64,000 nt of DNA from Macrostomum hystrix. Lineage: Eukaryota; Animalia; Platyhelminthes. The notes under the pieces are model-generated. The model made no database searches. It had not been told where the DNA came from and worked only from the letters and a program-made list of their open reading frames with translations. Every line of letters begins with the position of its first letter. Position 1 is the stretch's first letter. Below are positions 25,482 through 42,565 of this stretch, in pieces. The position numbers were made by a program, and so were the translations under genes. The stretch spans positions 2,232,001 to 2,296,000 of the forward strand of contig CATNEN010000034.1 of assembly GCA_950097015.1 (NCBI GenBank), read 5' to 3'.

Positions 25482-28400
25482 TCACGACGACTGTCCCGCC
25501 CGCAGACGCTGGGCCCTCAGCAGAGACCACACGCACAGCGGTCGCATGTAGCCTAGCGAGCGGTAGCGCCTGTCGTCAAACACCGCTTCGGGAGTCTGGT
25601 AGGCCAGCCCAAAGTCCTCCCACACTGTGCGGTAGGTGCCTTCGGCGCAGGCCAGTCCTTCGCGCACGAGGCCCTCCGAGAGCAGCAGCGAAGACACACC
25701 GTACGAGACTCCGATCCAAGACTCTTCGGCCTGCACGGAGCGGATGTCCTTGCCGCGATAGTCTGTCAGGCCGCCGTTAAACAGCCCCATGCGGCCGCCG
25801 CGACCTTGACTGAGGCAGTTGCAACGGTAGACTGTCTCCAGAGTCCGCTGAACAGTTTCTCGAGGTAAAAACTCCAGCGAGTCGGCCGCTTCAGAGCTAT
25901 CCTGAGACAGTCTCAGCATCCAGTGACCGAACAGCTGGTCCGACATCACCGCATCGTTAAATCGACCTCCGGTGTCGAAGCGAAACTGCTCGCCAGTCCA
26001 CAGTCGGTCTAGATAGGTCGATCGGCCTCGTTGATAAACTCGGCGCCAGCGTTCCGCAGCCTCAGGCTGGCCGGTTGCGTCCAGCATCTCGGAGGTGGCC
26101 AGTGTTGCGGCTAGCCAGAGGCCCGCACAATAGGCTGAGACGCCAGTCATTGGCCATGCGTCATAGGTCTGGTCGGCGTGCCCTAAATCGAGTCATTGCT
26201 TTGAAAATTTAAAATTTAATCCACTTAATGTGGGGGATGAGTGTTAGAGCGATCTAACGCGTTTGCCTCTCGCACCAAGGTCTTTGAGCTCGATTCCGCG
26301 GCGAGGCCACATTCATTTGGGTCGCAGCCGCGGAGAGAAGGCTATTGGACTTTTAGTGCAATTTACGTCATGAGGGCCACCTCTCAAGGTACAGTGGGAG
26401 TGTACACTGCCTGACGATGAGAAAGTCAGGACAGATGTACACACCTGCGTGATCGCGTGCCTGCGTACGGTATCTGTGTGCTTGTGTGCTCAAGAGTCAG
26501 CGAAATGGGCAGGATCGCCTCCTCGCTGTCTGCGGGTCTAGTGTCACAATGGTTATGTGCCATTGCCGCAGCCGACCTACAATTATTTTAAATAAGTTCT
26601 ACAATTAATATTAATATATTTCGCTGGAAGTACGAGTTAAGTCTAGGTTTGTGAAACTAATTTCCAAATTTGGCTCACTGGCAGTTCACCTGTATTTTCC
26701 ACAAGTCCGTCGTCATCTGTATCCCAGGCCAGGCAATAGTTCATTAACCCCACTACCGTAGGTAGCAGGTCTGTTAGGTACTCGGCATTGTGCCAGGGTA
26801 GCAGCTTCCAGTCTCGGTACACCGACAGGACGAATTTCGGATTGAGGTCGCGCCACTCGGAGCTGCTCATCATTTCGTAGCAGTTGACTCGGGTGAACGG
26901 TTCGTCCTCTGTGGTGAACCATTTTACGCAGAATATTAATAGGTTTACAACTGTCAAGCATTAAGATTTTGTGATGAAGGCAATAAATGTACTTAATCCT
27001 GGTACATATTCCTACGTAATCTTTTTTGTAACATCGAACAAAGCTGCACGACATTTTCTTATGTTCGAGATAAATTATGACTCATTTCGTTCTTTAAATC
27101 TGATGTGGTTAAGATGATTGATTACGAGTACGTAGAGAAAATGGACAATGATCCTGTGTTACACATGTATACGTAATATAAACTAATATATATATAAACT
27201 AATATATATTAATTTAAACTCAGTAACTCATAATTTCATATTCAGATTTTATTTTCTATTTTAGATCTGTACGAACTAAAACTACCCATCACTAACAAGG
27301 CTTTATGATGGTTCCATATTAGTTAGTTTAATATAAAAAATTTCTCGTAACTAAGAGAATACGTCTACTTTAACCGGGGCACGCCTTGTGGGTCTAGACA
27401 AGTCATTTGTGAACGAGCCTTACCCACGCCCCTACTGCAATGAGTCCTCCCCTCAGACCCTGGCACTGTATCCGTACCTGCTCATGTGCTCTGTTCTCGC
27501 AGAATGACTCACTTCTTTCACTTCACAGTATGAAATTAATACGCAAGTATCTTGCTACGTACAATTAGAAAAGAGTAAAAGAGACGAGAAAGTATGCACA
27601 GACGCAAGTGTGAGTGAGTGGGTGTGCGCTTCAGCGATAACACGCAGAAGCCAGCATGAATCGTCTGCGGAGTACTTGCGTCTCATCTAGTCATTCAGAA
27701 CACGTACACTGTAGAATTTCAAGCTTGAGAGTTTCAACTGGTCGCACTGCCTCTATTCTGTTACAACACAAGAGCAACAAAAAACTTGGGCTAAGAGAAA
27801 ACTGCAGCCAACAAACAGTTGGTTAGCTGGAGGCGCTGCGTTTTTAGCAAGCAATTCCGTTTTCGCTTTAAAATGAAAATATTCTGACTACTCATGGATT
27901 TTCTCGCGAACTTTGAAATAATCAAGAGTCTCGGTCAAGGTGGCTTTGGATCCGTACTGCTAGTGTCAGAAAAGCAATCCAAACAGGAATATGCAATTAA
28001 ACTCATTCCATTGCGACAATCAAAAGAAATAGAAACGAACAAAGTAGACAAAGTAGTTCGAGAAGTAGAAAATCTCGCTCAAATGTCCAAAATCGACGGC
28101 GTTGTGAAGTATCATCATTCCTGGTACGAGCACTTCGAAACGCCCGACAGCTTTGCCAAGTTCTCTGAGAAAATCGAAGACACACTGCACAGATCCATTC
28201 ATCTATCAGAATGCATGAGCTCTGGATCGTCAGACTGTCGCATTGGAGTCGATAAGATTACTGTGCTCTTTATTAAAATGGAATATTTTCCTGGAGTTAA
28301 TCTAAAGGAGTGGCTTCGTTCACTGTGCAGTTTGCAGGAACAAAAAAATGAAAATACTATAGCCGAGCCGAGTCCGTGGGTTCACGGACAGATACTGCTG

Positions 28401-31400
28401 GCCTTCCACAAGGTTTTATCGATTGTTCATCAAATTCACACGATGAAAATTCTTCATCGAGATCTGAAGCCTGAGAACATTCTGTTCAAAGAACCGTATG
28501 ACGTGCGAATATGTGACTTTGGACTTTCAAAGTGCGATTCCAGCAATAATCATAATCCTGGCGGAGGATCGAGCCAGGCGCAACACACTCACGACATTGG
28601 TACGACAGCATACATGGCGCCTGAACTACTAAAAAATCCACCACTTCCGCACAGCCGAAATTCTGATGCTTACGCACTCGGTCTAGTGTTTTTGGAGATG
28701 CTGACCATTTTTTGGAAATGATTCAGAGTCAGAGAAAATTGAAATTTTCCAGTTTCATCGAGAAGGAAAGATTCACAAGAAGGCAGAAATGTTCAAGGCT
28801 GAAACGGAGCTTATACAGAAACTGCTTTTCGAAGATCCAAAAAGGCGTCTCAGCGTTGAGGATGCATTGAAACATGAGCTGTTCTACACAGTACAATTGC
28901 CCTGTAACATTTGCTGTATTTCTTGCAAGGGAATCGAGGTCCTAAAGGAGCATCTATCAGGAAAGATGCATCAAAATAATCTTAAAAAGTGGAAATCAGA
29001 CGCAACCAGCGGGCCTCAGGCGGAGTCTCGAGAAACAACAGTCCCACGTCATGTCGCTAAGAGGGATAGTAACAATTACCATCAGATTGACACTACCGAG
29101 CAACTCGACTCTGACGCTCATTTAGTCGCAAGAAAGAAAGACAAAGAAAAAAAGACAATACAGAAGCTTCAAAGGCAACCTGCCGATGCCTTCCAGCAGC
29201 AACCTGTGCAGGAGTTGCCGGTAAATCAAGTACCAAAAAAATGTGACGAAGAAATAGAAAGTACTACAACAGAAGAATTCAATACGGTTCGTGCCGATGT
29301 TGAAGATCTGAAGACAAGAATGACGCAAATCGAAACGAAGCTTGATCAAATTCTGGCTCTTTTAAAACCGAAGTAAATACTGAAACCGAACAGCGAATTA
29401 CTGATTCTAAGTACTGTACTTTAGTTTTTCTCGAATTAGGGCGTACTTATGGTCAGCTGACATTGCTTTTTACATTAATTTTTTAATATAGTAAAATATG
29501 TTTTTCTCTATCATTTTCTCTAGACCATTTCCTGGAAAGTACATTTCCATTTCCTGAAAGCACTGTCTACTAGAATGATTAATAAATATAAGCAACTTTC
29601 GTGATAAGGAGTGTTACGAGCACTTTTAGTTCCAAACAGCGTCGATCATTGCCCAAACATGTATCTAAGATTTAGCCCGATTCTAAGAAATGACGACGAA
29701 GCTATCAAATCGGCAGCTCACCTGGATCGCCCAGATCATGCGGCATGGCCATTTGGTGATTGCGCTGCGATTTGGTCCCAGTAACTAGCCAGTACACCTG
29801 AGTGACGTCCTCCTCTGCTGCTGCCTTGGCTGTGGTCAATAATTATTATTGAGTTTTATTGATTATTGATGTGTGTTCAAGGACTTAAAATAGTACATCT
29901 AGGTAATTTAATCGGCTACATCAACTATAGCTCGGAGATTACAAACCGATTGTTATGAGGGCTAATTAATCAAGCATCGCAGAATTATAATTATTATACA
30001 AGTCTGTCTGAGAGCACAAAAGTGCACGAAGCCTGCATCTGCTAAAGAGGGTTATTCTGAATTCACTAAAAGCAAATTTACTAGTATATTAGCTAATTAC
30101 TCACGAGAGCTTCTATGCTTGAGTAAAATAGAGCAGATGCAGACTCAGAGCAAATAGAGCAATAGCTCACCGAAATCGTATTGCACCGCCACCTGCAGTT
30201 TGGGAAAGTTGGCCAATAATGCCCACGCAGCGTACGCGTGCACATCGTAGGTTGTAAACATCCGGTATTCGTGGCCCTCCAGGTAGGCAAAGGTGCCCAT
30301 TTCCTCGCGCACGGGGCAACGCCAGGACTTTAGCCGGTGCCAGTCAGCTGTCTGAGCCCCGTCATCAAGCCAGACGCTGCCTGAATCACTCAGGTAGTAA
30401 GCCTCGTTGAGCAGGGCCGACTTGAGCCAGTTCGGCAGGCTGGCGGGATCTTCATTGAGTATCGGCGCCTGCCACTCGTCGATGCGTTGCTGCCAGGACT
30501 GCGAGCTGGCGAAGGCGTGACGGGCCAGGTCGATGCTGGCAGCAGTTTGGTCGCCGGGAAACCAGCGCACATGACGACTGAAATGTTCATAAACTGACTT
30601 TAGTTAATTTTAATTCGAAGTACGCAGTCAAACTCTCCGAACCCACCGAGTGTAAGTATTCTCCGCAGCGCGAAAGTGAACTCTCGGCATGTGCCAGCTT
30701 AGGCAGAACCCGATGCCGTCAGCGTGCGATCCAGCTGCAACAACTCTTCCAGCGCAAACAGCCACAGCCAGGTGCTCGCCTGATTGAGTCACCTGCGCGG
30801 CTGTCTCGGCCGCCTCTGCACAAACGTCGGTTGGAGGACGGAGGCCGCCGGTTCGTTCGAGGCTGCGCCAAATTCCAGCAGCTGCCTGCCGGTCTGTCTT
30901 CGGGTTAAATCGTGGCCACAATGTCACAGTAACCTATAGATGGTTTGTGAGTTAGATGATTAGATTTTTTAAATAGTGTATAACGCAAAACGGACTTAAA
31001 AGAGGGCTATACGTAATGTTATTAGGGCTCAAAATATTGTTTGCTAACATTTGACACCCTTGATATTAGTCTAATGAATGTGATATTAGTCTAAAAAGCT
31101 TACGTTGCTACTCTGAACTGCCGAGATACCATAGGTGCACGGCATGTCGCCCCGAAACGTCTGGTGAATGAGACTACCGGCAATGCCTGACTCCGGGCAG
31201 CGGAAAGGCTCCACCGCGGCTCCGGCTGCGAGACTCTTCGGGGTTCCGTCACCATTCTGGAAGCAGAAGGTCACACTGACCTGCAAGTCCGAATCGGTAT
31301 CGTTCCAGACTGTCCACTCAAATAGGGTCAGTGGAAGACACGAGTCCTGAAAGGCGAAACGATTGAAATATCAGCAAAAAATGCACTAAGACTTTCAATA

Positions 31401-32137: not shown

Positions 32138-33159
32138 CTGAAATTTTTTATCGGCGCATCTTATTATTTGTGCTTTCTTTAAGACGAGTAGTATTACAAA
32201 CAAAAGGGTATTTGTCAATCGAAAAAAATATTATGTTTGTGATGAACGAAAAGGAATTTCAATATCGTACTCGTATTATTTGTTGCTTAAGATGTAAGAA
32301 TTGTTCATTTCTTACTTTTCTCGAGTTGAACCTTGTAAGTTAGTTTACTATGAGCAGTGCCAAGAAACTTTAAAGAATTCTAATGTCAACGCTTGCCTTT
32401 TAGCATTTCAGTACTGAAGTGTCCTGTAGACAGAGCTCTAGTCCCGATTGCCACACTCCCTCTGGCTAGCCTTCGCTGCGTTCTCTAACTTCACATTTTA
32501 TGCATTTAACTCAGAATGCCGCATTTAGCAGTGGGTAGGGCACAAACGCTTGAACATTATAGACAGACATACAAGCCTGCATGATTTTCCGAGTATGTGC
32601 AAGACCTATGTATTGGTCATGCTGCCTCGATTGGCTCTTTGCACTCAGTGCATACACTGCCATCATGGCCAAGCCTATAGACACACCCAGTGATGCAAAG
32701 GATAGGAAAGCATTCTATACGAGTGCTCACGGCCACCCCTCGGTGCAGCTGAGCAACACGTCTGAGCAGATTCTAGCCCCTCTGCCACTATCACATTCTT
32801 TATTCATTACATTCGGTGTACATCCCGTGTCTCTACCTTCCTCCCACCCCGATTGTCATGTAAAGCTGCAAGTTTGTTCAGGCTTCTCATGCCTGGCCAC
32901 TACTGCCTGTTGTCCCTACATTAATCAATTTTTCAACAGCTTATTCTAGGCTATTTTTTACTTCTGTCATCATTGCACTTTCAACAATTATTCATATTGA
33001 CTGCAGTCGACAGTTAGCAATTGGATTTAGGATTTTAAGATTTAAGATTTAATATTAATACTGCGATCAGCAAGCATAGACCAGCAGATCAGCTGCCAAG
33101 AACATCAACTTTGAGGTAGTGTCTTCCAACACAGCAGAGACTCACTGCTAATCGATTAA

Positions 33160-36100
33160 CAGTAGAAGGACAACGGGGTGTTTCAAAGAACCAAAATTTT
33201 TCTTTTTCTGTAACTCCCAAAATATTCCACCAATCGCCATGAAAATCCAGAACACGGACTAAAATATTCAACCAATCGCCATGAAAATCCAGAACACGGC
33301 CTAAAATATTCAACCAATCGCCATGAAAATCCAGAACACGGACTAAAATATTCAACCAATCGCCATGAAAATCCAGAACACGGCCTAAAATATTCAACCA
33401 ATCGCCAGGAAAATCCAGAACACGGCCTAAAATATTCAACCAATCGCCATGAAAATCCAGAACACGGCCTAAAATATTCAACCAATCGTCATGAGAATCC
33501 AGAACACGGCCTAAAATATTCAACCAATCGTCATGAGAATCCAGAACACGGCCTAAAATATTCAACCAATCGCCATGAAAATCCAGAACACGGCCTAAAA
33601 TATTCAACCAATCGCCATGAAAATCCAGAACACGGCCTAAAATATTCAACCAATCGCCATGAAAATCCAGAACACGGCCTAAAATATTCAACCAATCGCC
33701 ATGAAAATCCAGAACACGGCCTAAAATATTCAACCAATCGCCATGAAAATCCAGAACACGGCCTAAAATATTCAACCAATCGCCAGGAAAATCCAGAACA
33801 CGGCCTAAAATATTCAACCAATCGCCATGAAAATCCAGAACACGGCCTAAAATATTCAACCAATCGCCATGAAAATTCAGAACACGGGCTAGAATATTCA
33901 ACCAATCGCCATGAAAATCCAGAACACGGCCTAAAATATTCAACCAATCGCCATGAAAATCCAGAACACGGCCTAAAATATTCAACCAATAGCCATGAAA
34001 ATTCAGAACACGGCCTAAAATATTCAACCAATCGCCATGAAAATTCAGAACACGGCCTAAAATATTCAACCAATCGCCATGAAAATCCAGAACACGGCCT
34101 AAAATATTCAACCAATCGCCATGAAAATCCAGAACACGGCCTAAAATATTCAACCAATCGCCATGAAAATCCAGAACACGGCCTAAAATATTCAACCAAT
34201 CGCCAGGAAAATCCAGAACACGGCCTAAAATATTCAACCAATCGCCATGAAAATCCAGAACACGGTCTAAAATATTCAACCAATCGCCAGGAAAATCCAG
34301 AACACGGCCTAAAATATTCAACCAATCGCCATGAAAATCCAGAACACGGCCTAAAATATTCAACCAATCGCCATGAAAATCCAGAACACGGTCTAAAATA
34401 TTCAACCAATCGCCAGGAAAATCCAGAACACGGCCTAAAATATTCAACCAATCGCCATGAGAATCCAGAACACGGCCTAAAATATTCAACCAATCGCCAT
34501 GAAAATCCAGAACACGGGCTAAAATATTCAACCAATAGCCAGGAAAATCCAGAACACGGCCTAAAATATTCAACCAATCGCCATGAGAATCCAGAACACG
34601 GCCTAAAATATTCAACCAATCGCCAGGAGAATCCAGAACACGGCCTAAAATATTCAACCAATCGCCAGGAAAATCCAGAACACGGCCTAAAATATTCAAC
34701 CAATCGCCAGGAGAATCCAGAACACGGCCTAAAATATTCAACCAATCGCCAGGAAAATCCAGAACACGGGCTAAAATATTCAACCAATCGCCAGTAAAAT
34801 CCAGAACACGGGCTAAATTATTCAACCAATCGCCAGGAAAATCCAGAACACGGCCTAAAATATTCAACCAATCGCCATGAAAATCCAGAACACGGCCTAA
34901 AATATTCAACCAATCGCCAGGAAAATCCAGAACACGGCCTAAAATATTCAACCAATCGCCAGGAAAATCCAGAACACAGGCTAAAATATTCAACCAATCG
35001 CCATGAAAATCCAGAACACGGGCTAAAATATTCAACCAATCGCCATGAAAATCCAGAACACGGCCTAAAATATTCAACCAATCGCCAGGAAAATCCAGAA
35101 CACGGGCTAAAATATTCAACCAATCGCCAGGAAAATCCAGAACACGGGCTAAAATATTCAACCAATCGCCATGAAAATCCAGAACACGGCCTAAATTATT
35201 CAACCAATCGCCAGGAAAATCCAGAACACGGCCTAAAATATTCAACCAATCGCCAGGAAAATCCAGAACACGGGCTAAAATATTCAACCAATCGCCATGA
35301 AAATCCAGAACACGGCCTAAAATATTCAACCAATCTCCAGGAAAATCCAGAACACGGCCTAAAATATTCAACCAATCGCCAGGAAAATCCAGAACACGGG
35401 CTAAATTATTCAACCAATCGCCAGGAAAATCCAGAACACGGGCTAAAATATTCAACCAATCGCCATGAAAATCCAGAACACGGCCTAAAATATTCAACCA
35501 ATCGCCATGAAAATCCAGAACACGGCCTAAAATATTCAACCAATCGCCATGAAAATCCAGAACACGGCCTAAATTATTCAACCAATCGCCATGAAAATCC
35601 AGAACACGGGCTAAAATATTCAACCAATCGCCATGAAAATCCAGAACACGGCCTAAAATATTCAACCAATCGCCATGAAAATCCAGAACACGGCCTAAAA
35701 TATTCAACCAATCGCCAGGAAAATCCAGAACACGGCCTAAAATATTCAACCAATCGCCATGGAAATCCAGAACACGGCCTAAAATATTCAACCAATCGCC
35801 ATGAAAATTCAGAACACGGCCTAAAATATTCAACCAATCGCCAGGAAAATCCAGAACACGGCCTAAAATATTCAACCAATCGCCATGAAAATCCAGAACA
35901 CGGCCTAAAATATTCAACCAATCGCCATGAAAATCCAGAACACGGCCTAAAATATTCAACCAATCGCCATGAAAATCCAGAACACGGCCTAAAATATTCA
36001 ACCAATCGCCATGAAAATCCAGAACACGGCCTAAAATATTCAACCAATCGCCATGAAAATCCAGAACACGGCCTAAAATATTCAACCAATCGCCAGGAAA

Positions 36101-39100
36101 ATCCAGAACACGGGCTAAAATATTCAACCAATCGCCATGAGAATCCAGAACACGGCCTAAAATTTTCAACCAATCGTCATGAGAATCCAGAACACGGCCT
36201 AAAATATTCAACCAATCGTCATGAGAATCCAGAACACGGCCTAAAATATTCAACCAATCGCCATGAAAATCCAGAACACGGCCTAAAATATTCAACCAAT
36301 CGCCATGAAAATCCAGAACACGGCCTAAAATATTCAACCAATCGCCATGAAAATCCAGAACACGGCCTAAAATATTCAACCAATCGCCATGAAAATCCAG
36401 AACACGGCCTAAAATATTCAACCAATCGCCATGAAAATCCAGAACACGGCCTAAAATATTCAACCAATCGCCAGGAAAATCCAGAACACGGCCTAAAATA
36501 TTCAACCAATCGCCATGAAAATCCAGAACACGGCCTAAAATATTCAACCAATCGCCATGAAAATTCAGAACACGGGCTAGAATATTCAACCAATCGCCAT
36601 GAAAATCCAGAACACGGCCTAAAATATTCAACCAATCGCCATGAAAATCCAGAACACGGCCTAAAATATTCAACCAATCGCCATGAAAATTCAGAACACG
36701 GCCTAAAATATTCAACCAATCGCCATGAAAATTCAGAACACGGCCTAAAATATTCAACCAATCGCCATGAAAATCCAGAACACGGCCTAAAATATTCAAC
36801 CAATCGCCATGAAAATCCAGAACACGGCCTAAAATATTCAACCAATCGCCATGAAAATCCAGAACACGGCCTAAAATATTCAACCAATCGCCAGGAAAAT
36901 CCAGAACACGGCCTAAAATATTCAACCAATCGCCATGAAAATCCAGAACACGGTCTAAAATATTCAACCAATCGCCAGGAAAATCCAGAACACGGCCTAA
37001 AATATTCAACCAATCGCCATGAAAATCCAGAACACGGCCTAAAATATTCAACCAATCGCCATGAAAATCCAGAACACGGTCTAAAATATTCAACCAATCG
37101 CCAGGAAAATCCAGAACACGGCCTAAAATATTCAACCAATCGCCATGAGAATCCAGAACACGGCCTAAAATATTCAACCAATCGCCATGAAAATCCAGAA
37201 CACGGGCTAAAATATTCAACCAATAGCCAGGAAAATCCAGAACACGGCCTAAAATATTCAACCAATCGCCATGAGAATCCAGAACACGGCCTAAAATATT
37301 CAACCAATCGCCAGGAGAATCCAGAACACGGCCTAAAATATTCAACCAATCGCCAGGAAAATCCAGAACACGGCCTAAAATATTCAACCAATCGCCAGGA
37401 GAATCCAGAACACGGCCTAAAATATTCAACCAATCGCCAGGAAAATCCAGAACACGGGCTAAAATATTCAACCAATCGCCAGTAAAATCCAGAACACGGG
37501 CTAAATTATTCAACCAATCGCCAGGAAAATCCAGAACACGGCCTAAAATATTCAACCAATCGCCATGAAAATCCAGAACACGGCCTAAAATATTCAACCA
37601 ATCGCCAGGAAAATCCAGAACACGGCCTAAAATATTCAACCAATCGCCAGGAAAATCCAGAACACAGGCTAAAATATTCAACCAATCGCCATGAAAATCC
37701 AGAACACGGGCTAAAATATTCAACCAATCGCCATGAAAATCCAGAACACGGCCTAAAATATTCAACCAATCGCCAGGAAAATCCAGAACACGGGCTAAAA
37801 TATTCAACCAATCGCCAGGAAAATCCAGAACACGGGCTAAAATATTCAACCAATCGCCATGAAAATCCAGAACACGGCCTAAATTATTCAACCAATCGCC
37901 AGGAAAATCCAGAACACGGCCTAAAATATTCAACCAATCGCCAGGAAAATCCAGAACACGGGCTAAAATATTCAACCAATCGCCATGAAAATCCAGAACA
38001 CGGCCTAAAATATTCAACCAATCTCCAGGAAAATCCAGAACACGGCCTAAAATATTCAACCAATCGCCAGGAAAATCCAGAACACGGGCTAAATTATTCA
38101 ACCAATCGCCAGGAAAATCCAGAACACGGCCTAAAATATTCAACCAATCGCCATGAAAATCCAGAACACGGCCTAAAATATTCAACCAATCGCCATGAAA
38201 ATCCAGAACACGGCCTAAAATATTCAACCAATCGCCATGAAAATCCAGAACACGGCCTAAATTATTCAACCAATCGCCATGAAAATCCAGAACACGGGCT
38301 AAAATATTCAACCAATCGCCATGAAAATCCAGAACACGGCCTAAAATATTCAACCAATCGCCATGAAAATCCAGAACACGGCCTAAAATATTCAACCAAT
38401 CGCCAGGAAAATCCAGAACACGGCCTAAAATATTCAACCAATCGCCATGGAAATCCAGAACACGGCCTAAAATATTCAACCAATCGCCATGAAAATTCAG
38501 AACACGGCCTAAAATATTCAACCAATCGCCAGGAAAATCCAGAACACGGCCTAAAATATTCAACCAATCGCCATGAAAATCCAGAACACGGCCTAAAATA
38601 TTCAACCAATCGCCATGAAAATCCAGAACACGGCCTAAAATATTCAACCAATCGCCATGAAAATCCAGAACACGGCCTAAAATATTCAACCAATCGCCAT
38701 GAAAATCCAGAACACGGCCTAAAATATTCAACCAATCGCCATGAAAATCCAGAACACGGCCTAAAATATTCAACCAATCGCCAGGAAAATCCAGAACACG
38801 GCCTAAAATATTCAACCAATCGCCATGAAAATCCAGAACACGGCCTAAAATATTCAACCAATCGCCAGGAAAATCCAGAACACGGCCTAAAATATTCAAC
38901 CAATCGCCATGGAAATCCAGAACACGGCCTAAAATATTCAACCAATCGCCATGAAAATTCAGAACACGGCCTAAAATATTCAACCAATCGCCAGGAAAAT
39001 CCAGAACACGGCCTAAAATATTCAACCAATCGCCATGAAAATCCAGAACACGGCCTAAAATATTCAACCAATCGCCATGAAAATCCAGAACACGGCCTAA

Positions 39101-42100
39101 AATATTCAACCAATCGCCATGAAAATCCAGAACACGGCCTAAAATATTCAACCAATCGCCATGAAAATCCAGAACACGGCCTAAAATATTCAACCAATCG
39201 CCATGAAAATCCAGAACACGGGCTAAAATATTCAACCAATCGCCAGGAAAATCCAGAACACGGCCTAAAATATTCAACCAATCGCCATGAGAATCCAGAA
39301 CACGGCCTAAAATATTCAACCAATCGCCATGAAAATCCAGAACACGGGCTAAAATATTCAACCAATAGCCAGGAAAATCCAGAACACGGCCTAAAATATT
39401 CAACCAATCGCCATGAGAATCCAGAACACGGCCTAAAATATTCAACCAATCGCCAGGAGAATCCAGAACACGGCCTAAAATATTCAACCAATCGCCAGGA
39501 AAATCCAGAACACGGCCTAAAATATTCAACCAATCGCCAGGAGAATCCAGAACACGGCCTAAAATATTCAACCAATCGCCAGGAAAATCCAGAACACGGG
39601 CTAAAATATTCAACCAATCGCCAGTAAAATCCAGAACACGGGCTAAATTATTCAACCAATCGCCAGGAAAATCCAGAACACGGCCTAAAATATTCAACCA
39701 ATCGCCATGAAAATCCAGAACACGGCCTAAAATATTCAACCAATCGCCAGGAAAATCCAGAACACGGCCTAAAATATTCAACCAATCGCCAGGAAAATCC
39801 AGAACACAGGCTAAAATATTCAACCAATCGCCATGAAAATCCAGAACACGGGCTAAAATATTCAACCAATCGCCATGAAAATCCAGAACACGGCCTAAAA
39901 TATTCAACCAATCGCCAGGAAAATCCAGAACACGGGCTAAAATATTCAACCAATCGCCAGGAAAATCCAGAACACGGGCTAAAATATTCAACCAATCGCC
40001 ATGAAAATCCAGAACACGGCCTAAATTATTCAACCAATCGCCAGGAAAATCCAGAACACGGCCTAAAATATTCAACCAATCGCCAGGAAAATCCAGAACA
40101 CGGGCTAAAATATTCAACCAATCGCCATGAAAATCCAGAACACGGCCTAAAATATTCAACCAATCTCCAGGAAAATCCAGAACACGGCCTAAAATATTCA
40201 ACCAATCGCCAGGAAAATCCAGAACACGGGCTAAATTATTCAACCAATCGCCAGGAAAATCCAGAACACGGGCTAAAATATTCAACCAATCGCCATGAAA
40301 ATCCAGAACACGGCCTAAAATATTCAACCAATCGCCATGAAAATCCAGAACACGGCCTAAAATATTCAACCAATCGCCATGAAAATCCAGAACACGGCCT
40401 AAATTATTCAACCAATCGCCATGAAAATCCAGAACACGGGCTAAAATATTCAACCAATCGCCATGAAAATCCAGAACACGGCCTAAAATATTCAACCAAT
40501 CGCCATGAAAATCCAGAACACGGCCTAAAATATTCAACCAATCGCCAGGAAAATCCAGAACACGGCCTAAAATATTCAACCAATCGCCATGGAAATCCAG
40601 AACACGGCCTAAAATATTCAACCAATCGCCATGAAAATTCAGAACACGGCCTAAAATATTCAACCAATCGCCAGGAAAATCCAGAACACGGCCTAAAATA
40701 TTCAACCAATCGCCATGAAAATCCAGAACACGGCCTAAAATATTCAACCAATCGCCATGAAAATCCAGAACACGGCCTAAAATATTCAACCAATCGCCAT
40801 GAAAATCCAGAACACGGCCTAAAATATTCAACCAATCGCCATGAAAATCCAGAACACGGCCTAAAATATTCAACCAATCGCCATGAAAATCCAGAACACG
40901 GCCTAAAATATTCAACCAATCGCCATGAAAATCCAGAACACGGCCTAAAATATTCAACCAATCGCCATGAAAATCCAGAACACGGCCTAAAATATTCAAC
41001 CAATCGCCATGAAAATCCAGAACACGGCCTAAAATATTCAACCAATCGCCAGGAAAATCCAGAACACGGGCTAAAATATTCAACCAATCGCCAGGAAAAT
41101 CCAGAACACGGGCTAAAATATTCAACCAATCGCCATGAAAATCCAGAACACGGCCTAAATTATTCAACCAATCGCCAGGAAAATCCAGAACACGGCCTAA
41201 AATATTCAACCAATCGCCAGGAAAATCCAGAACACGGGCTAAAATATTCAACCAATCGCCATGAAAATCCAGAACACGGCCTAAAATATTCAACCAATCT
41301 CCAGGAAAATCCAGAACACGGCCTAAAATATTCAACCAATCGCCAGGAAAATCCAGAACACGGGCTAAATTATTCAACCAATCGCCAGGAAAATCCAGAA
41401 CACGGGCTAAAATATTCAACCAATCGCCATGAAAATCCAGAACACGGCCTAAAATATTCAACCAATCGCCATGAAAATCCAGAACACGGCCTAAAATATT
41501 CAACCAATCGCCATGAAAATCCAGAACACGGCCTAAATTATTCAACCAATCGCCATGAAAATCCAGAACACGGGCTAAAATATTCAACCAATCGCCATGA
41601 AAATCCAGAACACGGCCTAAAATATTCAACCAATCGCCATGAAAATCCAGAACACGGCCTAAAATATTCAACCAATCGCCAGGAAAATCCAGAACACGGC
41701 CTAAAATATTCAACCAATCGCCATGGAAATCCAGAACACGGCCTAAAATATTCAACCAATCGCCATGAAAATTCAGAACACGGCCTAAAATATTCAACCA
41801 ATCGCCAGGAAAATCCAGAACACGGCCTAAAATATTCAACCAATCGCCATGAAAATCCAGAACACGGCCTAAAATATTCAACCAATCGCCATGAAAATCC
41901 AGAACACGGCCTAAAATATTCAACCAATCGCCATGAAAATCCAGAACACGGCCTAAAATATTCAACCAATCGCCATGAAAATCCAGAACACGGCCTAAAA
42001 TATTCAACCAATCGCCATGAAAATCCAGAACACGGCCTAAAATATTCAACCAATCGCCAGGAAAATCCAGAACACGGGCTAAAATATTCAACCAATCGCC

Positions 42101-42565
42101 ATGAGAATCCAGAACACGGCCTAAAATTTTCCGCTCTTCAACGATACTTTTCAACCGATACGATACAGTACAGAGCATTCAACGATTCTCGCCGGGGTGT
42201 CTGGTGGCAAAACCACCAAAATAGACAAAACATTTTCTGCCCACAATGTTTCATCAGTAGCCATGTCGGCTACTATTTTTGACTATATTCTATTGATTAT
42301 ATATCTAATTTATACGCTTTTAAACCAATGTGGATTCGCCATAGAGGTGAATGCAGAGCAATGGTAAATGCCCTTGTCACAAGGGTCTTCGACAAGAATG
42401 GCTGAATAACTCAAAATTGCTCAATTGGACGGCTTTGAAAGTTAGTTCATCAGACGGGAAATTTTACTTAAAATAGTGGACTTTCACGAAAATCGGTCAT
42501 TCAGTTTGGGAGCTATCGTGAAGTAGGCTGTGCTATTTTAATTACTCCCTGTGTTCTTTCTACTG
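33160..42565 (+). mobile_element. TTAA-flanked MITE (family M, piggyBac-like target site) inflated to 9.4 kb by an internal satellite
   Basis: TTAA (33156-33159)|CAGTAGAAGGACAACGGGG on the left and CCCTGTGTTCTTTCTACTG|TTAA (42566-42569) on the right: imperfect TIRs matching at 16/21. The unique portions are homologous to the ~550-bp copy at 18810 and to the copies near 44050, 51995 and 59366. Confidence 0.8.
33214..42127. repeat. 42-bp satellite array, ~212 units, with higher-order periodicity
   Basis: Unit AAAATATTCAACCAATCGCCATGAAAATCCAGAACACGGCCT. Diagnostic variants recur at offsets of 2688, 2142 and 1134 bp (64, 51 and 27 units). Confidence 0.98.

What the first reader, a model, noticed from the sequence alone, without database searches (positions are those of the whole stretch)
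27894..29376. Candidate invertebrate PKR analogue: eIF2-alpha-type kinase + JAZ/matrin zinc finger + coiled coil
Seen: an intact kinase with eIF2aK hallmarks, namely a DF..NF start, KYHHSWYE followed by a ~45-aa Ser-rich insert and LFIKME, and the activation loop HTHDIGT (compare HRI HTSRVGT, PERK HTGQVGT). An in-frame stop at 27885 excludes any N-terminal sensor. After the kinase come C-NI-C-x12-H-LSGKM-H (28903-28971) and four clean a/d heptads (F,V,V,L,M,I,L,I,L; 29278-29364). Established: C-x2-C-x12-H-x5-H fingers with HxxGKxH are the matrin/JAZ (ZNF346/ZNF385) type, several of which bind dsRNA. PKR uses N-terminal dsRBMs and dimerisation, and PKR, PERK, HRI and GCN2 do not have this layout. 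Inference: an RNA-sensing, oligomerisation-activated translation shut-off kinase with a C-terminal sensor, possibly antiviral.
Basis: partly seen in the sequence, partly recalled or inferred. Interest (0 to 1): 0.88.

Follow-up and report, generated by a model that had tools for sequence, protein, structure and literature searches.

The report
Flatworm eIF2-kinase with RNA-type finger
A Macrostomum flatworm expresses an intact, intronless kinase of the family that shuts down protein synthesis under stress, carrying an RNA-type zinc finger and a short coiled coil at its tail instead of any known sensor domain; this layout is found nowhere else, but whether it senses double-stranded RNA as vertebrate PKR does is untested.

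Summary
The frameshift is not in the RNA. Four transcriptome assemblies, from two studies and two species labels, each give one unspliced, polyadenylated mRNA (about 27741-29604) that has one T fewer in the T-run at 28708-28713. This restores a 493-aa ORF.

The kinase belongs with the eIF2-alpha kinases. Its best matches are PERK, HRI, GCN2 and PKR, by sequence and by predicted fold. It has the beta4-beta5 insert, the beta4/beta5 motifs and the HT..GT activation loop. In trees it is sister to all other eIF2-alpha kinases rather than inside any of the four classes, and AU tests leave its position open.

The finger passes Pfam's zf-met cut-off. The four heptads are conserved in M. lignano, and AlphaFold2 predicts a confident helix there for the window's own tail. 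The M. lignano gene sits in the same intron of a GH116 (GBA2-like) gene. It carries a second finger that passes the JAZ dsRNA-finger cut-off; that finger has decayed in this species.

No other protein in the searched databases has this layout. RNA sensing, eIF2-alpha phosphorylation and antiviral function remain inference. I rate it a new variant of a known kind, of moderate-to-high interest. The scan had not noted it before on other DNA.

The parts
27741..29604 (+). Unspliced, polyadenylated mRNA of the kinase gene. The 5' end lies at or upstream of 27741 and the poly(A) site follows 29604.
   Evidence: single contigs cover 27741-29501 (X6), 27804-29604 (X5), 27841-29443 (X8) and 27876-29575 (X2). 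X5 has a loose end of about 24 A after 29604. No joints fall inside. Depth is zero in the flanking intron (26923-27627).
27894..29376 (+). Coding sequence. It gives 493 aa once the extra T of the assembly is left out, as in the RNA.
28708..28713 (+). Run of six T in the window. All four transcriptome assemblies have five. This is the only break in the ORF.
   Evidence: table 4: 28708 'left out 1' in X8, X6, X2 and X5. X2 is otherwise identical to the window over 1699 nt.
27894..28890 (+). Protein kinase domain (residues 1-332) of eIF2-alpha kinase type, starting at the first residue.
   Evidence: Pfam Pkinase 4e-38. PDB phmmer best hits are PERK 6e-24 and HRI 8e-23. Motif alignment.
28131..28262 (+). 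Ser-rich insert between beta4 and beta5 (residues 80-123), at the position of the insert in eIF2-alpha kinases.
   Evidence: the beta4-to-beta5 stretch is 68 residues here, 26 in the PDK1/AGC rows, 49-57 in the PKR rows and 61 in the Pomacea row. AlphaFold2 confidence is low for part of this region in the M. lignano counterpart.
28584..28625 (+). Activation segment HTHDIGTTAYMAPE, with Thr at the position of the family's HT..GT motif.
   Evidence: it aligns with PERK HTGQVGT and HRI HTSGVGT.
28711..28767 (+). alphaG region FGNDSESEKIEIFQFHREG. It has an S/T-E-x-E-K motif like the T-E-M-E-R of HRI, preceded by a 2-aa insertion.
   Evidence: alignment; residue 277 is Thr in X8, X6 and X5.
28903..28971 (+). 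zf-met (matrin/U1-type) zinc finger CNIC-x12-HLSGKMH, residues 337-359.
   Evidence: Pfam zf-met 24.2 bits against a cut-off of 21.2; zf-C2H2_jaz 13 bits, below its cut-off of 22.6. Coordinates.
29077..29154 (+). Decayed second finger (YHQIDTTEQLDSDAHLVARKKDKEKK) and a basic cluster. It aligns with an intact JAZ-type finger in M. lignano.
   Evidence: alignment to L001 ORF 7092-7706; the M. lignano finger scores zf-C2H2_jaz 23.0 against 22.6 and zf-met 22.4 against 21.2.
28972..29277 (+). Low-complexity, probably disordered linker between the finger and the coiled coil.
   Evidence: AlphaFold2 pLDDT is below 50 here, with no secondary structure from residue 97 to 187 of the 223-aa piece. It has no conservation with M. 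lignano outside the finger relic.
29278..29364 (+). Four-heptad coiled-coil segment FNTVRADVEDLKTRMTQIETKLDQILALL, residues 462-490.
   Evidence: 9/9 a/d positions hydrophobic, reached by 64 of 20000 shuffles. Conserved in M. lignano. AlphaFold2 predicts one helix with pLDDT 80-93.
29581..29586 (+). AATAAA poly(A) signal, 18 nt before the poly(A) site.
26689..30577 (-). Part of the host gene, a GH116 (GBA2-like) glucosylceramidase. Its exons are 26689-26908, 29722-29829 and 30171-30577, and its 2813-nt intron holds the kinase gene on the opposite strand.
   Evidence: Spliced joints 26908>29722 and 29829>30171 with CT..AC ends. Pfam DUF608/GH116 at 4.6e-20 and 5.5e-13.

Best explanation
This is a functional, lineage-restricted fifth type of eIF2-alpha-family kinase in Macrostomum flatworms. 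It is an intronless gene nested in an intron of a GH116 gene.

Its 493-aa product is a bare eIF2-alpha-kinase-type catalytic domain with no N-terminal regulatory region. The domain is followed by one U1/matrin/JAZ-type zinc finger (ancestrally probably two), a disordered basic linker and a four-heptad coiled coil.

Most likely mechanism (inferred). The coiled coil holds two or more kinase domains together, replacing the dimerising regulatory domains of PKR, PERK, HRI and GCN2. The finger tethers the kinase to structured or double-stranded RNA, which raises local concentration and allows trans-autophosphorylation on the HT..GT loop. The active kinase then phosphorylates eIF2-alpha and lowers translation.

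Shown: the gene is expressed, intact and conserved; the family of the kinase; the finger type; the heptad helix.

Inferred: RNA binding, dimer-driven activation, the substrate, and any antiviral role.
For: Expression and intactness:
- Four runs each give one unspliced poly(A)+ contig without the extra T, and the ORF is 493 aa.
- Within and between close species there are 5 synonymous and 4 non-synonymous differences and no disruptive ones.

Conservation:
- The M. lignano counterpart (P0001, 65% identical over the kinase) lies between the same GH116 exons.
- Its identity to the window is similar to that of the flanking GH116 exons, 60-70%.

Family of the kinase:
- PDB sequence hits are PERK 6e-24, HRI 8e-23 and GCN2 5e-18, matching both lobes.
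- The best single-domain hits in 1.8 billion representatives are HRI, PERK, PKR and GCN2-type proteins.
- The eIF2-alpha-kinase-specific beta4/beta5 motifs, the insert and the HT..GT loop are present.
- The tree puts the pair with the eIF2-alpha kinases at 100/100 against PDK1/AGC rows.
- The AlphaFold2 model of the M. lignano counterpart (pLDDT 83.8) matches PKR, GCN2, HRI and PERK first.

Finger:
- zf-met is above Pfam's cut-off in the window, and JAZ plus zf-met are above cut-off for the M. lignano second finger.
- The nearest solved fingers are all RNA-associated: REH1, ZMAT2, Bud20/ZNF593, ZFa, ZNF346, PRP9, Star-PAP. Their E-values are weak, 0.01-2.

Coil.

From my own knowledge, not tested here: forced dimerisation is sufficient to activate the isolated PKR kinase domain (Ung et al. 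2001). Domain shuffling onto an EIF2AK made PKR and PKZ (PMC11305385).
Against: - The Arg/Asp pair of the SR[YF]xxDF motif at the start of the domain is D2/N6 here and D2/D6 in M. lignano. I recall this pair as the PKR back-to-back dimer salt bridge.
- The alphaG motif has a 2-aa insertion, plus 3-4 more residues in M. lignano, and K or A where all compared eIF2-alpha kinases have Arg. Docking of eIF2-alpha may therefore be altered.
- In the best tree the pair lies outside all 40 other eIF2-alpha kinases on a long stem (0.86). With only one outgroup family, the tree alone cannot prove membership.
- The window's finger is below the JAZ cut-off and has Cys where the conserved aromatic residue usually stands.
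- As I recall, a single finger of this class binds RNA weakly in the studied cases.
- A constitutive coiled coil would predict a constitutively active kinase unless something else restrains it.
- No expression or induction data were found.
Confidence: 0.5

Rival explanations
1. A true convergent PKR analogue. The finger or fingers bind viral or other long dsRNA, binding activates the kinase, and translation is shut off as an antiviral response.
For: The finger class includes proven dsRNA binders (ZFa, ZNF346/JAZ). The M. lignano second finger passes the JAZ 'dsRNA-binding' Pfam cut-off. A mollusc (Pomacea) carries an eIF2-alpha-type kinase with a C-terminal dsRBM, so C-terminal RNA modules on such kinases do occur in spiralians. 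PKR and PKZ arose by comparable domain gains.
Against: - There is only one canonical finger per species.
- The window's finger fails the JAZ cut-off.
- Divergence between species is no greater than for the neighbouring housekeeping gene, unlike the fast-evolving PKR.
- The gene is single-copy, with no sign of an arms-race expansion.
- No induction data exist.
Confidence: 0.2
2. A ribosome- or RNP-docked stress kinase. The finger binds a cellular RNA duplex (rRNA or snRNA), as REH1, ZNF593/Bud20 and ZMAT2 do. The kinase would monitor the state of the translation or RNA-processing machinery rather than foreign RNA.
For: The closest solved fingers to the window's finger are REH1, ZMAT2 and Bud20, which sit on pre-60S particles or the spliceosome. 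The basic cluster RKKDKEKK follows the finger relic. GCN2 shows that eIF2-alpha kinases can work on the ribosome (PDB 9f58 among the hits).
Against: Those finger matches have E-values of 0.1-2 and rest on the generic finger consensus. No other ribosome-binding element was recognised.
Confidence: 0.15
3. A neofunctionalised kinase that descends from an eIF2-alpha kinase but no longer targets eIF2-alpha. The finger and coil would serve localisation or protein partners.
For: The alphaG region is altered in length and lacks the family's Arg. The N-lobe Arg/Asp pair is lost. The branch is long and lies outside the four classes.
Against: The Thr/Ser-x-x-Glu core of alphaG and the following hydrophobic and Arg-x-Gly positions are retained, and residue 277 is Thr in the other isolates and in M. 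lignano. All catalytic motifs and the activation-loop Thr are intact.
Confidence: 0.13
4. A decaying retrocopy or pseudogene, frameshifted in the genome.
For: The gene is intronless and nested in an intron. The window has a frameshift. The M. lignano annotation also ends early in a repeat.
Against: The frameshift is absent from all four transcriptome assemblies, including one otherwise identical to the window. The ORF is intact over 493 aa. Position, kinase, finger and coil are conserved between distant Macrostomum species.
Confidence: 0.02

Closest known systems
PKR (EIF2AK2) and fish PKZ
   Same: An eIF2-alpha-type kinase domain joined to small nucleic-acid-binding modules. It has the kinase insert and the HT..GT-type activation loop. 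PKR kinase domains are among the best fold matches.
   Different: PKR and PKZ carry N-terminal dsRBMs or Z-alpha domains, whereas here the module is a C-terminal zinc finger plus a coiled coil. The kinase does not group with PKR in the best tree (AU p 0.088). The N-lobe Arg/Asp pair is absent. PKR is reported to have arisen in jawed vertebrates (PMC11305385).
HRI, PERK and GCN2 (EIF2AK1, 3, 4), the eIF2-alpha kinases known in invertebrates
   Same: They are the best sequence matches (PERK 6e-24, HRI 8e-23). They share the beta4/beta5 motifs, the insert position, the activation loop and the alphaG core.
   Different: There is no haem-binding N-terminus, no luminal domain or membrane span, and no RWD, pseudokinase or HisRS-like region. 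The insert is much shorter. The kinase lies outside each class in the tree.
Pomacea canaliculata 'EIF2AK1-like' XP_025115876 (P0067)
   Same: The kinase domain stands at the N-terminus with no upstream sensor, and an RNA-binding-type module sits at the C-terminus. It comes from a spiralian invertebrate.
   Different: Its module is a dsRBM (Pfam dsrm 1.1e-8), not a zinc finger, and it has no coiled coil. The two are not shown to be sister lineages (AU p 0.14).
JAZ/ZNF346, Xenopus ZFa, ZMAT2, REH1, ZNF593 (U1/matrin/zf-met fingers)
   Same: The C-x2-C-x12-H-x5-H spacing with H-x2-G-K-x-H. Pfam zf-met is passed, and JAZ is passed by the M. lignano second finger.
   Different: Those proteins are non-enzymatic RNA-binding or assembly factors, usually with several fingers. 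Here one finger is appended to a kinase. The window's finger has Cys at the usual aromatic position.

Membership tests
eIF2-alpha kinase (PEK) family | Complete catalytic kinase core (Gly loop, VAIK Lys, HRD, DFG, APE) | tested here: met
   LGQGGFGSV, YAIK, HRDLKPEN, DFG and MAPE are all present. Pfam Pkinase 4e-38.
eIF2-alpha kinase (PEK) family | Insert between beta4 and beta5, flanked by the [IV]xRY[YH]xxWxE and L[YF]I[QK]ME motifs | tested here: met
   VVKYHHSWYE, a 44-aa insert, then VLFIKMEYF. The AGC outgroup rows lack the insert and both motifs.
eIF2-alpha kinase (PEK) family | Activation-loop Thr in the H-T-x-x-x-G-T context (which I recall as the PKR T446/T451 positions) | tested here: met
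   HTHDIGT aligns with PERK HTGQVGT and HRI HTSGVGT.
eIF2-alpha kinase (PEK) family | alphaG substrate-docking motif F-x-T-x-x-E-R at fixed spacing | tested here: inconclusive
   S/T-E-S-E-K is present (Thr in three other runs and in M. lignano). It follows a 2-aa insertion, and Arg is replaced by K here and by A in M. lignano.
eIF2-alpha kinase (PEK) family | N-lobe Arg/Asp pair of the R-[YF]-x-x-D-F motif, recalled as the back-to-back dimer salt bridge | tested here: not met
   The protein starts M-D-F-L-A-N-F, with Asp at the Arg position and Asn at the Asp position. This bears on the activation mode rather than on descent.
eIF2-alpha kinase (PEK) family | Kinase domain groups with known eIF2-alpha kinases in phylogeny | tested here: inconclusive
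   The pair sits with the 40 eIF2-alpha kinase rows at 100/100 against PDK1/AGC rows, but as sister to all of them (99/98), and only one outgroup family was available. AU tests do not reject union with PKR, PERK, HRI, GCN2 or Pomacea, with p from 0.06 to 0.19.
eIF2-alpha kinase (PEK) family | Phosphorylates eIF2-alpha on Ser51 | not testable with these tools
   This needs a biochemical or yeast assay.
PKR (EIF2AK2) | N-terminal dsRBM(s) | tested here: not met
   A stop lies 6 nt upstream of the ATG and the kinase starts at residue 1. Pfam finds no dsrm.
PKR (EIF2AK2) | Kinase domain inside the PKR clade | tested here: not met
   The PKR rows form a clade with the PERK rows (97/96) that excludes the pair. 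Forcing the union costs 22.5 lnL, with p-AU 0.088.
zf-met / U1-matrin-type zinc finger (PF12874) | C-x2-C-x12-H-x5-H spacing and a score above Pfam's gathering cut-off | tested here: met
   CNIC-x12-H-LSGKM-H scores 22.7-24.2 bits against 21.2.
zf-C2H2_jaz dsRNA-binding finger (PF12171) | Score above Pfam's gathering cut-off | tested here: not met
   The window's finger scores 13 bits against 22.6. The M. lignano second finger does pass, 23.0 against 22.6, but its counterpart in the window has lost both Cys and one His.
zf-C2H2_jaz dsRNA-binding finger (PF12171) | Binds A-form dsRNA | not testable with these tools
   This needs a binding assay.
Coiled coil | At least four uninterrupted heptads with hydrophobic a/d positions in a helix | tested here: met
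   9/9 a/d positions are hydrophobic, reached by 64 of 20000 shuffles. The same nine are hydrophobic in M. lignano. AlphaFold2 predicts a helix at residues 188-220 of the 223-aa piece with pLDDT 80-93. Oligomeric state was not tested.

The most novel reading that the evidence does not exclude
Macrostomum flatworms independently built a PKR-like innate sensor. An eIF2-alpha kinase is made RNA-duplex-responsive by C-terminal JAZ-type fingers and a dimerising coiled coil. dsRNA-triggered translational shut-off would then have evolved at least twice in animals, with unrelated RNA-binding modules placed at opposite ends of the kinase.
Probability: 0.2. Interest if true: 0.85.

Novelty: new variant of a known kind. 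Interest (0 to 1): 0.58.

Why it matters
Animals outside the vertebrates are thought to have only HRI, PERK and GCN2. PKR is reported to be an invention of jawed vertebrates, made by adding dsRNA-binding domains to an existing eIF2-alpha kinase (PMC11305385).

Here a kinase of the same family has a different RNA-type module and its own dimerisation element. It is expressed and conserved in a flatworm genus that is, as far as I recall, open to RNA interference and transgenesis. If it phosphorylates eIF2-alpha in response to RNA, it would be a second, independent case of the same molecular tinkering. It would also offer a handle on antiviral or RNA-quality sensing in an invertebrate without interferon.

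If it does not, it is still a natural experiment on how much of the regulatory apparatus of these kinases a simple coiled coil can replace. It also shows that the frameshift in this assembly is a homopolymer error, and that the M. lignano protein model is probably truncated.

Tried and rejected
- Pseudogene reading: rejected. The frameshift is absent from all four runs and the gene is conserved in position and sequence.
- Specific kinship with vertebrate PKR: not found, though not formally rejected.
- Specific kinship with the Pomacea kinase-dsRBM protein: not found, and not rejected.
- Search for relatives of the C-terminal 160 aa: 20 candidates, none significant.
- Protein-atlas search with the 223-aa tail: only scores of 0.71 or below, uninformative.
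- Word-indexed search with the M. lignano protein: swamped by generic kinases, with nothing close but itself.
- Motif scan of all 269 fetched proteins for C-x2-C-x10-18-H-x5-H: only the M. lignano counterpart.
- Other copies in the window: none.
- Literature search for the M. lignano gene id: no paper.
- Literature searches for an eIF2-alpha kinase with a zinc finger or coiled coil, or for invertebrate PKR-like proteins with dsRBDs: nothing relevant.
- Single-sequence AlphaFold2 of the tail: gave a usable result only for the last helix.
- The bacterial-type promoter scan is irrelevant to a eukaryotic gene and is not used.
- Long multi-kinase hits at the top (P0002-P0006 and others) owe their scores to repeated kinase domains. 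The six that were scanned are not GCN2.

Full report
**What is there**

The + strand carries an ATG at 27894, preceded by an in-frame TGA at 27885. A 275-aa ORF runs to 28721. A second frame, one base over, is open from 28705 to 29376.

Pfam finds a protein kinase domain in the first piece (4e-38). In the second piece it finds the last kinase subdomains (residues 18-60) followed by a zf-met finger. The finger scores 22.7 bits, or 24.2 when the tail is scanned alone, against a cut-off of 21.2. The related JAZ model scores only 13 bits against 22.6.

**The frameshift is not in the RNA**

I laid Logan contigs of four public runs on 26500-30700. All four behave as transcriptomes:
- depth is zero over the intron flanks (26923-27627);
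- there are spliced joints with CT..AC ends (26908>29722, 29829>30171, 30577>30647), which belong to a minus-strand gene.

In each run a single contig covers the kinase gene without any joint: 27741-29501, 27804-29604, 27841-29443 and 27876-29575. In run X5 the contig ends in a poly(A) tract after 29604, 18 nt past an AATAAA at 29581.

In all four runs one letter is left out at 28708, inside the run of six T at 28708-28713. Run X2 is otherwise identical to the window over 1699 nt, so the same strain expresses the five-T form. With five T the ORF is continuous and encodes 493 aa.

The break is therefore most likely a homopolymer error of the assembly.

The other differences seen in the runs are 5 synonymous and 4 non-synonymous changes (S277T, F287L, M299R, C450W), none disruptive.

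**Genomic setting and conservation**

The gene lies on the opposite strand inside a 2813-nt intron of a GH116 (GBA2-like glucosylceramidase) gene.

The only close relative in a library of 1.84 billion representative proteins is P0001. It is 65% identical over residues 1-273 and is a 'hypothetical protein' of Macrostomum lignano. Its locus, L001, has the homologous GH116 exons on both sides, on the opposite strand. It is therefore the positional counterpart in a different Macrostomum species.

This fits notes of earlier agents that this genome is a Macrostomum flatworm. The flanking GH116 exons are 60-70% identical between the two loci. The kinase is thus about as conserved as its housekeeping neighbour.

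In M. lignano the annotated protein ends inside a tandem repeat. A further ORF in another frame (L001 7092-7706) follows. It encodes a canonical finger, CSVC-x12-HLAGQKH, which passes both the JAZ 'dsRNA-binding' model (23.0 against 22.6) and zf-met (22.4 against 21.2). It ends in ELNSIRSDVDGLKARMYNMETKLNQILALLQQQ.

That tail aligns with the window's EFNTVRADVEDLKTRMTQIETKLDQILALLKPK, with all nine a/d positions hydrophobic in both. The M. lignano second finger aligns with the window's YHQIDTTEQLDSDAHLVARKKDKEKK, which has lost both Cys and one His.

Conversely, the first finger of M. lignano has a 4-aa insertion and no longer matches Pfam (E 0.34). The ancestral gene therefore probably had two fingers, and each species keeps one canonical finger. 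Whether the M. lignano pieces form one ORF is not settled.

**What kind of kinase**

Sequence evidence:
- Against all PDB sequences the best hits are PERK (6e-24, 6.7e-24, 5.3e-23) and HRI (8.3e-23), each matching both lobes. Then come PDK1 (4e-18, C-lobe only) and GCN2 (5e-18). Human PKR scores 7e-15.
- In the exhaustive library search many top scores belong to proteins with several kinase domains. Rescoring single domains with the full 335-aa kinase puts other proteins first.
- Source names or Pfam show these to be lamprey HRI, crayfish PERK, frog and fish PKR, an RWD-bearing GCN2 and unnamed relatives.

An alignment shows features shared with those kinases and absent from the PDK1/AGC rows:
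- beta4 VVKYHHSWYE;
- a beta4-to-beta5 stretch of 68 residues, against 26 in the outgroup;
- beta5 LFIKMEYF;
- the activation loop HTHDIGT;
- an alphaG core S/T-E-S-E-K-x-x-[IV]-[FL]-x-x-x-R-x-G.

Residue 277 of that core is Ser in the window but Thr in the three other runs and in M. lignano.

Two family features are not kept:
- The domain starts M-D-F-L-A-N-F, so the Arg and Asp of the SR[YF]xxDF motif are Asp and Asn. From memory, these form the back-to-back dimer salt bridge in PKR.
- alphaG carries a 2-aa insertion, longer in M. lignano, and K or A in place of Arg.

Tree evidence:
- The careful tree has 53 rows and 303 columns under LG+C20+F+G4.
- It joins the Macrostomum pair with 40 eIF2-alpha kinase rows at 100/100 against 11 PDK1/AGC rows.
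- It places the pair as sister to all 40 (99/98) on a long stem.
- The PKR and PERK rows are sisters (97/96).
- AU tests do not reject uniting the pair with PKR (p 0.088), PERK (0.094), GCN2 (0.063), lamprey HRI (0.19) or the Pomacea protein (0.14).
- With only one outgroup family, the tree alone cannot prove membership. The motifs and the search rankings carry that claim.

Structure evidence:
- An AlphaFold2 model of the M. lignano counterpart (residues 1-365, 35-row alignment, pLDDT 83.8, pTM 0.86) matches PKR, GCN2, HRI and PERK first in Swiss-Prot models. In the PDB it matches PERK 3qd2, PKR 6d3k and GCN2 1zxe first.
- The alignment given to AlphaFold2 consisted of eIF2-alpha kinases, so this is not fully independent.

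**The tail**

Single-sequence AlphaFold2 of the last 223 aa is poor overall (pLDDT 48.9). It does predict one confident helix, at pLDDT 80-93, over residues 188-220 of that piece, which covers the heptad stretch. It predicts no structure in the roughly 90-aa linker.

Nine of nine a/d positions are L/I/V/M/F, and only 64 of 20000 shuffles of the protein reach that.

The tail has no detectable relatives beyond M. lignano.

The nearest solved fingers are all RNA-associated U1/matrin-type fingers:
- for the window's finger, REH1, ZMAT2 and Bud20;
- for the M. lignano second finger, Star-PAP, ZMAT2, ZFa, PRP9, ZNF346 and ZNF593.

Their E-values are only 0.01-2, so these are leads, not tests.

**How it most likely works**

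Shown: an expressed, intact, conserved gene. Its product is an eIF2-alpha-kinase-type catalytic domain with no N-terminal sensor, a zf-met finger, a disordered basic linker and a four-heptad helix.

Inferred:
- The coiled coil supplies the dimerisation that regulatory domains supply in the four known classes. From my own knowledge, heterologous dimerisers can activate the isolated PKR kinase domain.
- The finger tethers the kinase to structured RNA.
- Clustering allows autophosphorylation on the HT..GT loop.
- eIF2-alpha is then phosphorylated.

I put about 0.5 on this general mechanism and about 0.2 on the specific antiviral dsRNA-sensor version.

Rivals:
- Docking on cellular RNPs such as ribosomes.
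- Loss of eIF2-alpha as substrate, suggested by the altered alphaG region and the lost Arg/Asp pair.
- A pseudogene reading, which the RNA evidence and conservation all but exclude.

**Comparison with what is known**

It is not PKR. It has no dsRBM, it is not in the PKR clade, and PKR is reported to have arisen in jawed vertebrates by gain of dsRBDs on an EIF2AK (PMC11305385). An earlier survey also found EIF2AK2 only in chordates (PMC5851622). It lacks the defining regulatory domains of HRI, PERK and GCN2.

The nearest parallel in layout is a Pomacea canaliculata protein annotated 'EIF2AK1-like'. It has the kinase at the N-terminus and a Pfam-significant dsRBM at the C-terminus. By the one search I could run, that protein too is restricted to its genus.

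I found no paper describing an eIF2-alpha kinase with a zinc finger or coiled coil, and none naming the M. lignano gene.

**Verdict**

It is a new variant of a known kind: an orphan eIF2-alpha-family kinase with a new regulatory architecture. Its interest is moderate to high, because the key claims can be tested directly in a laboratory flatworm.

Noticed in passing
P0067 / P0273 / P0277 (Pomacea canaliculata XP_025115876 and isoforms; not in the window): An apple-snail protein annotated 'EIF2AK1-like' has an eIF2-alpha-type kinase at the N-terminus and a Pfam-significant dsRBM (1.1e-8) at the C-terminus. This is a PKR-like domain pair in reverse order in an invertebrate. A search with its tail found it only in Pomacea. 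I found no paper on it.
   Followed up: partly
L001:7068-7430 (M. lignano NIVC01000067.1): A tandem repeat of about 54 nt, which reads KVQLRQTRRQLRRRSPKP in the annotated frame, lies between the first finger and the second finger plus coil. It is open in three frames. The annotated 426-aa protein ends inside it, so the M. lignano gene model is probably truncated by a frame error or a real shift.
   Followed up: partly
window 26689-30577 (- strand): The host gene is a GH116 (GBA2-like) glucosylceramidase. The nesting of the kinase gene in the same intron is conserved between this species and M. lignano.
   Followed up: yes
window 28333-28614: Depth in the RNA runs rises three- to six-fold here, with loose ends at 28453, 28485 and 28489. 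Contigs of other kinases match the conserved HRDLKPEN catalytic-loop region, so this is cross-matching and not a feature of this gene.
   Followed up: partly
window 33000-42500: A long stretch has constant composition and extreme strand skew (GC skew about -0.34, AT skew about +0.45), consistent with the 9-kb satellite that another reader noted (s1-355521).
   Followed up: no
window 26500-26547: Word depth is very high (141-1113) in all four RNA runs over about 48 nt, with many short contigs carrying 3-4 mismatches. It is probably a fragment of an abundant repeat or a highly expressed RNA.
   Followed up: no
window 27804 (run X5, species label B): The contig of the second species label carries 13 unmatched letters (CGCAGGGTTGGGG) upstream of 27804. 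This could be 5'-UTR divergence or a leader. The in-frame stop at 27885 means it cannot extend the ORF.
   Followed up: no
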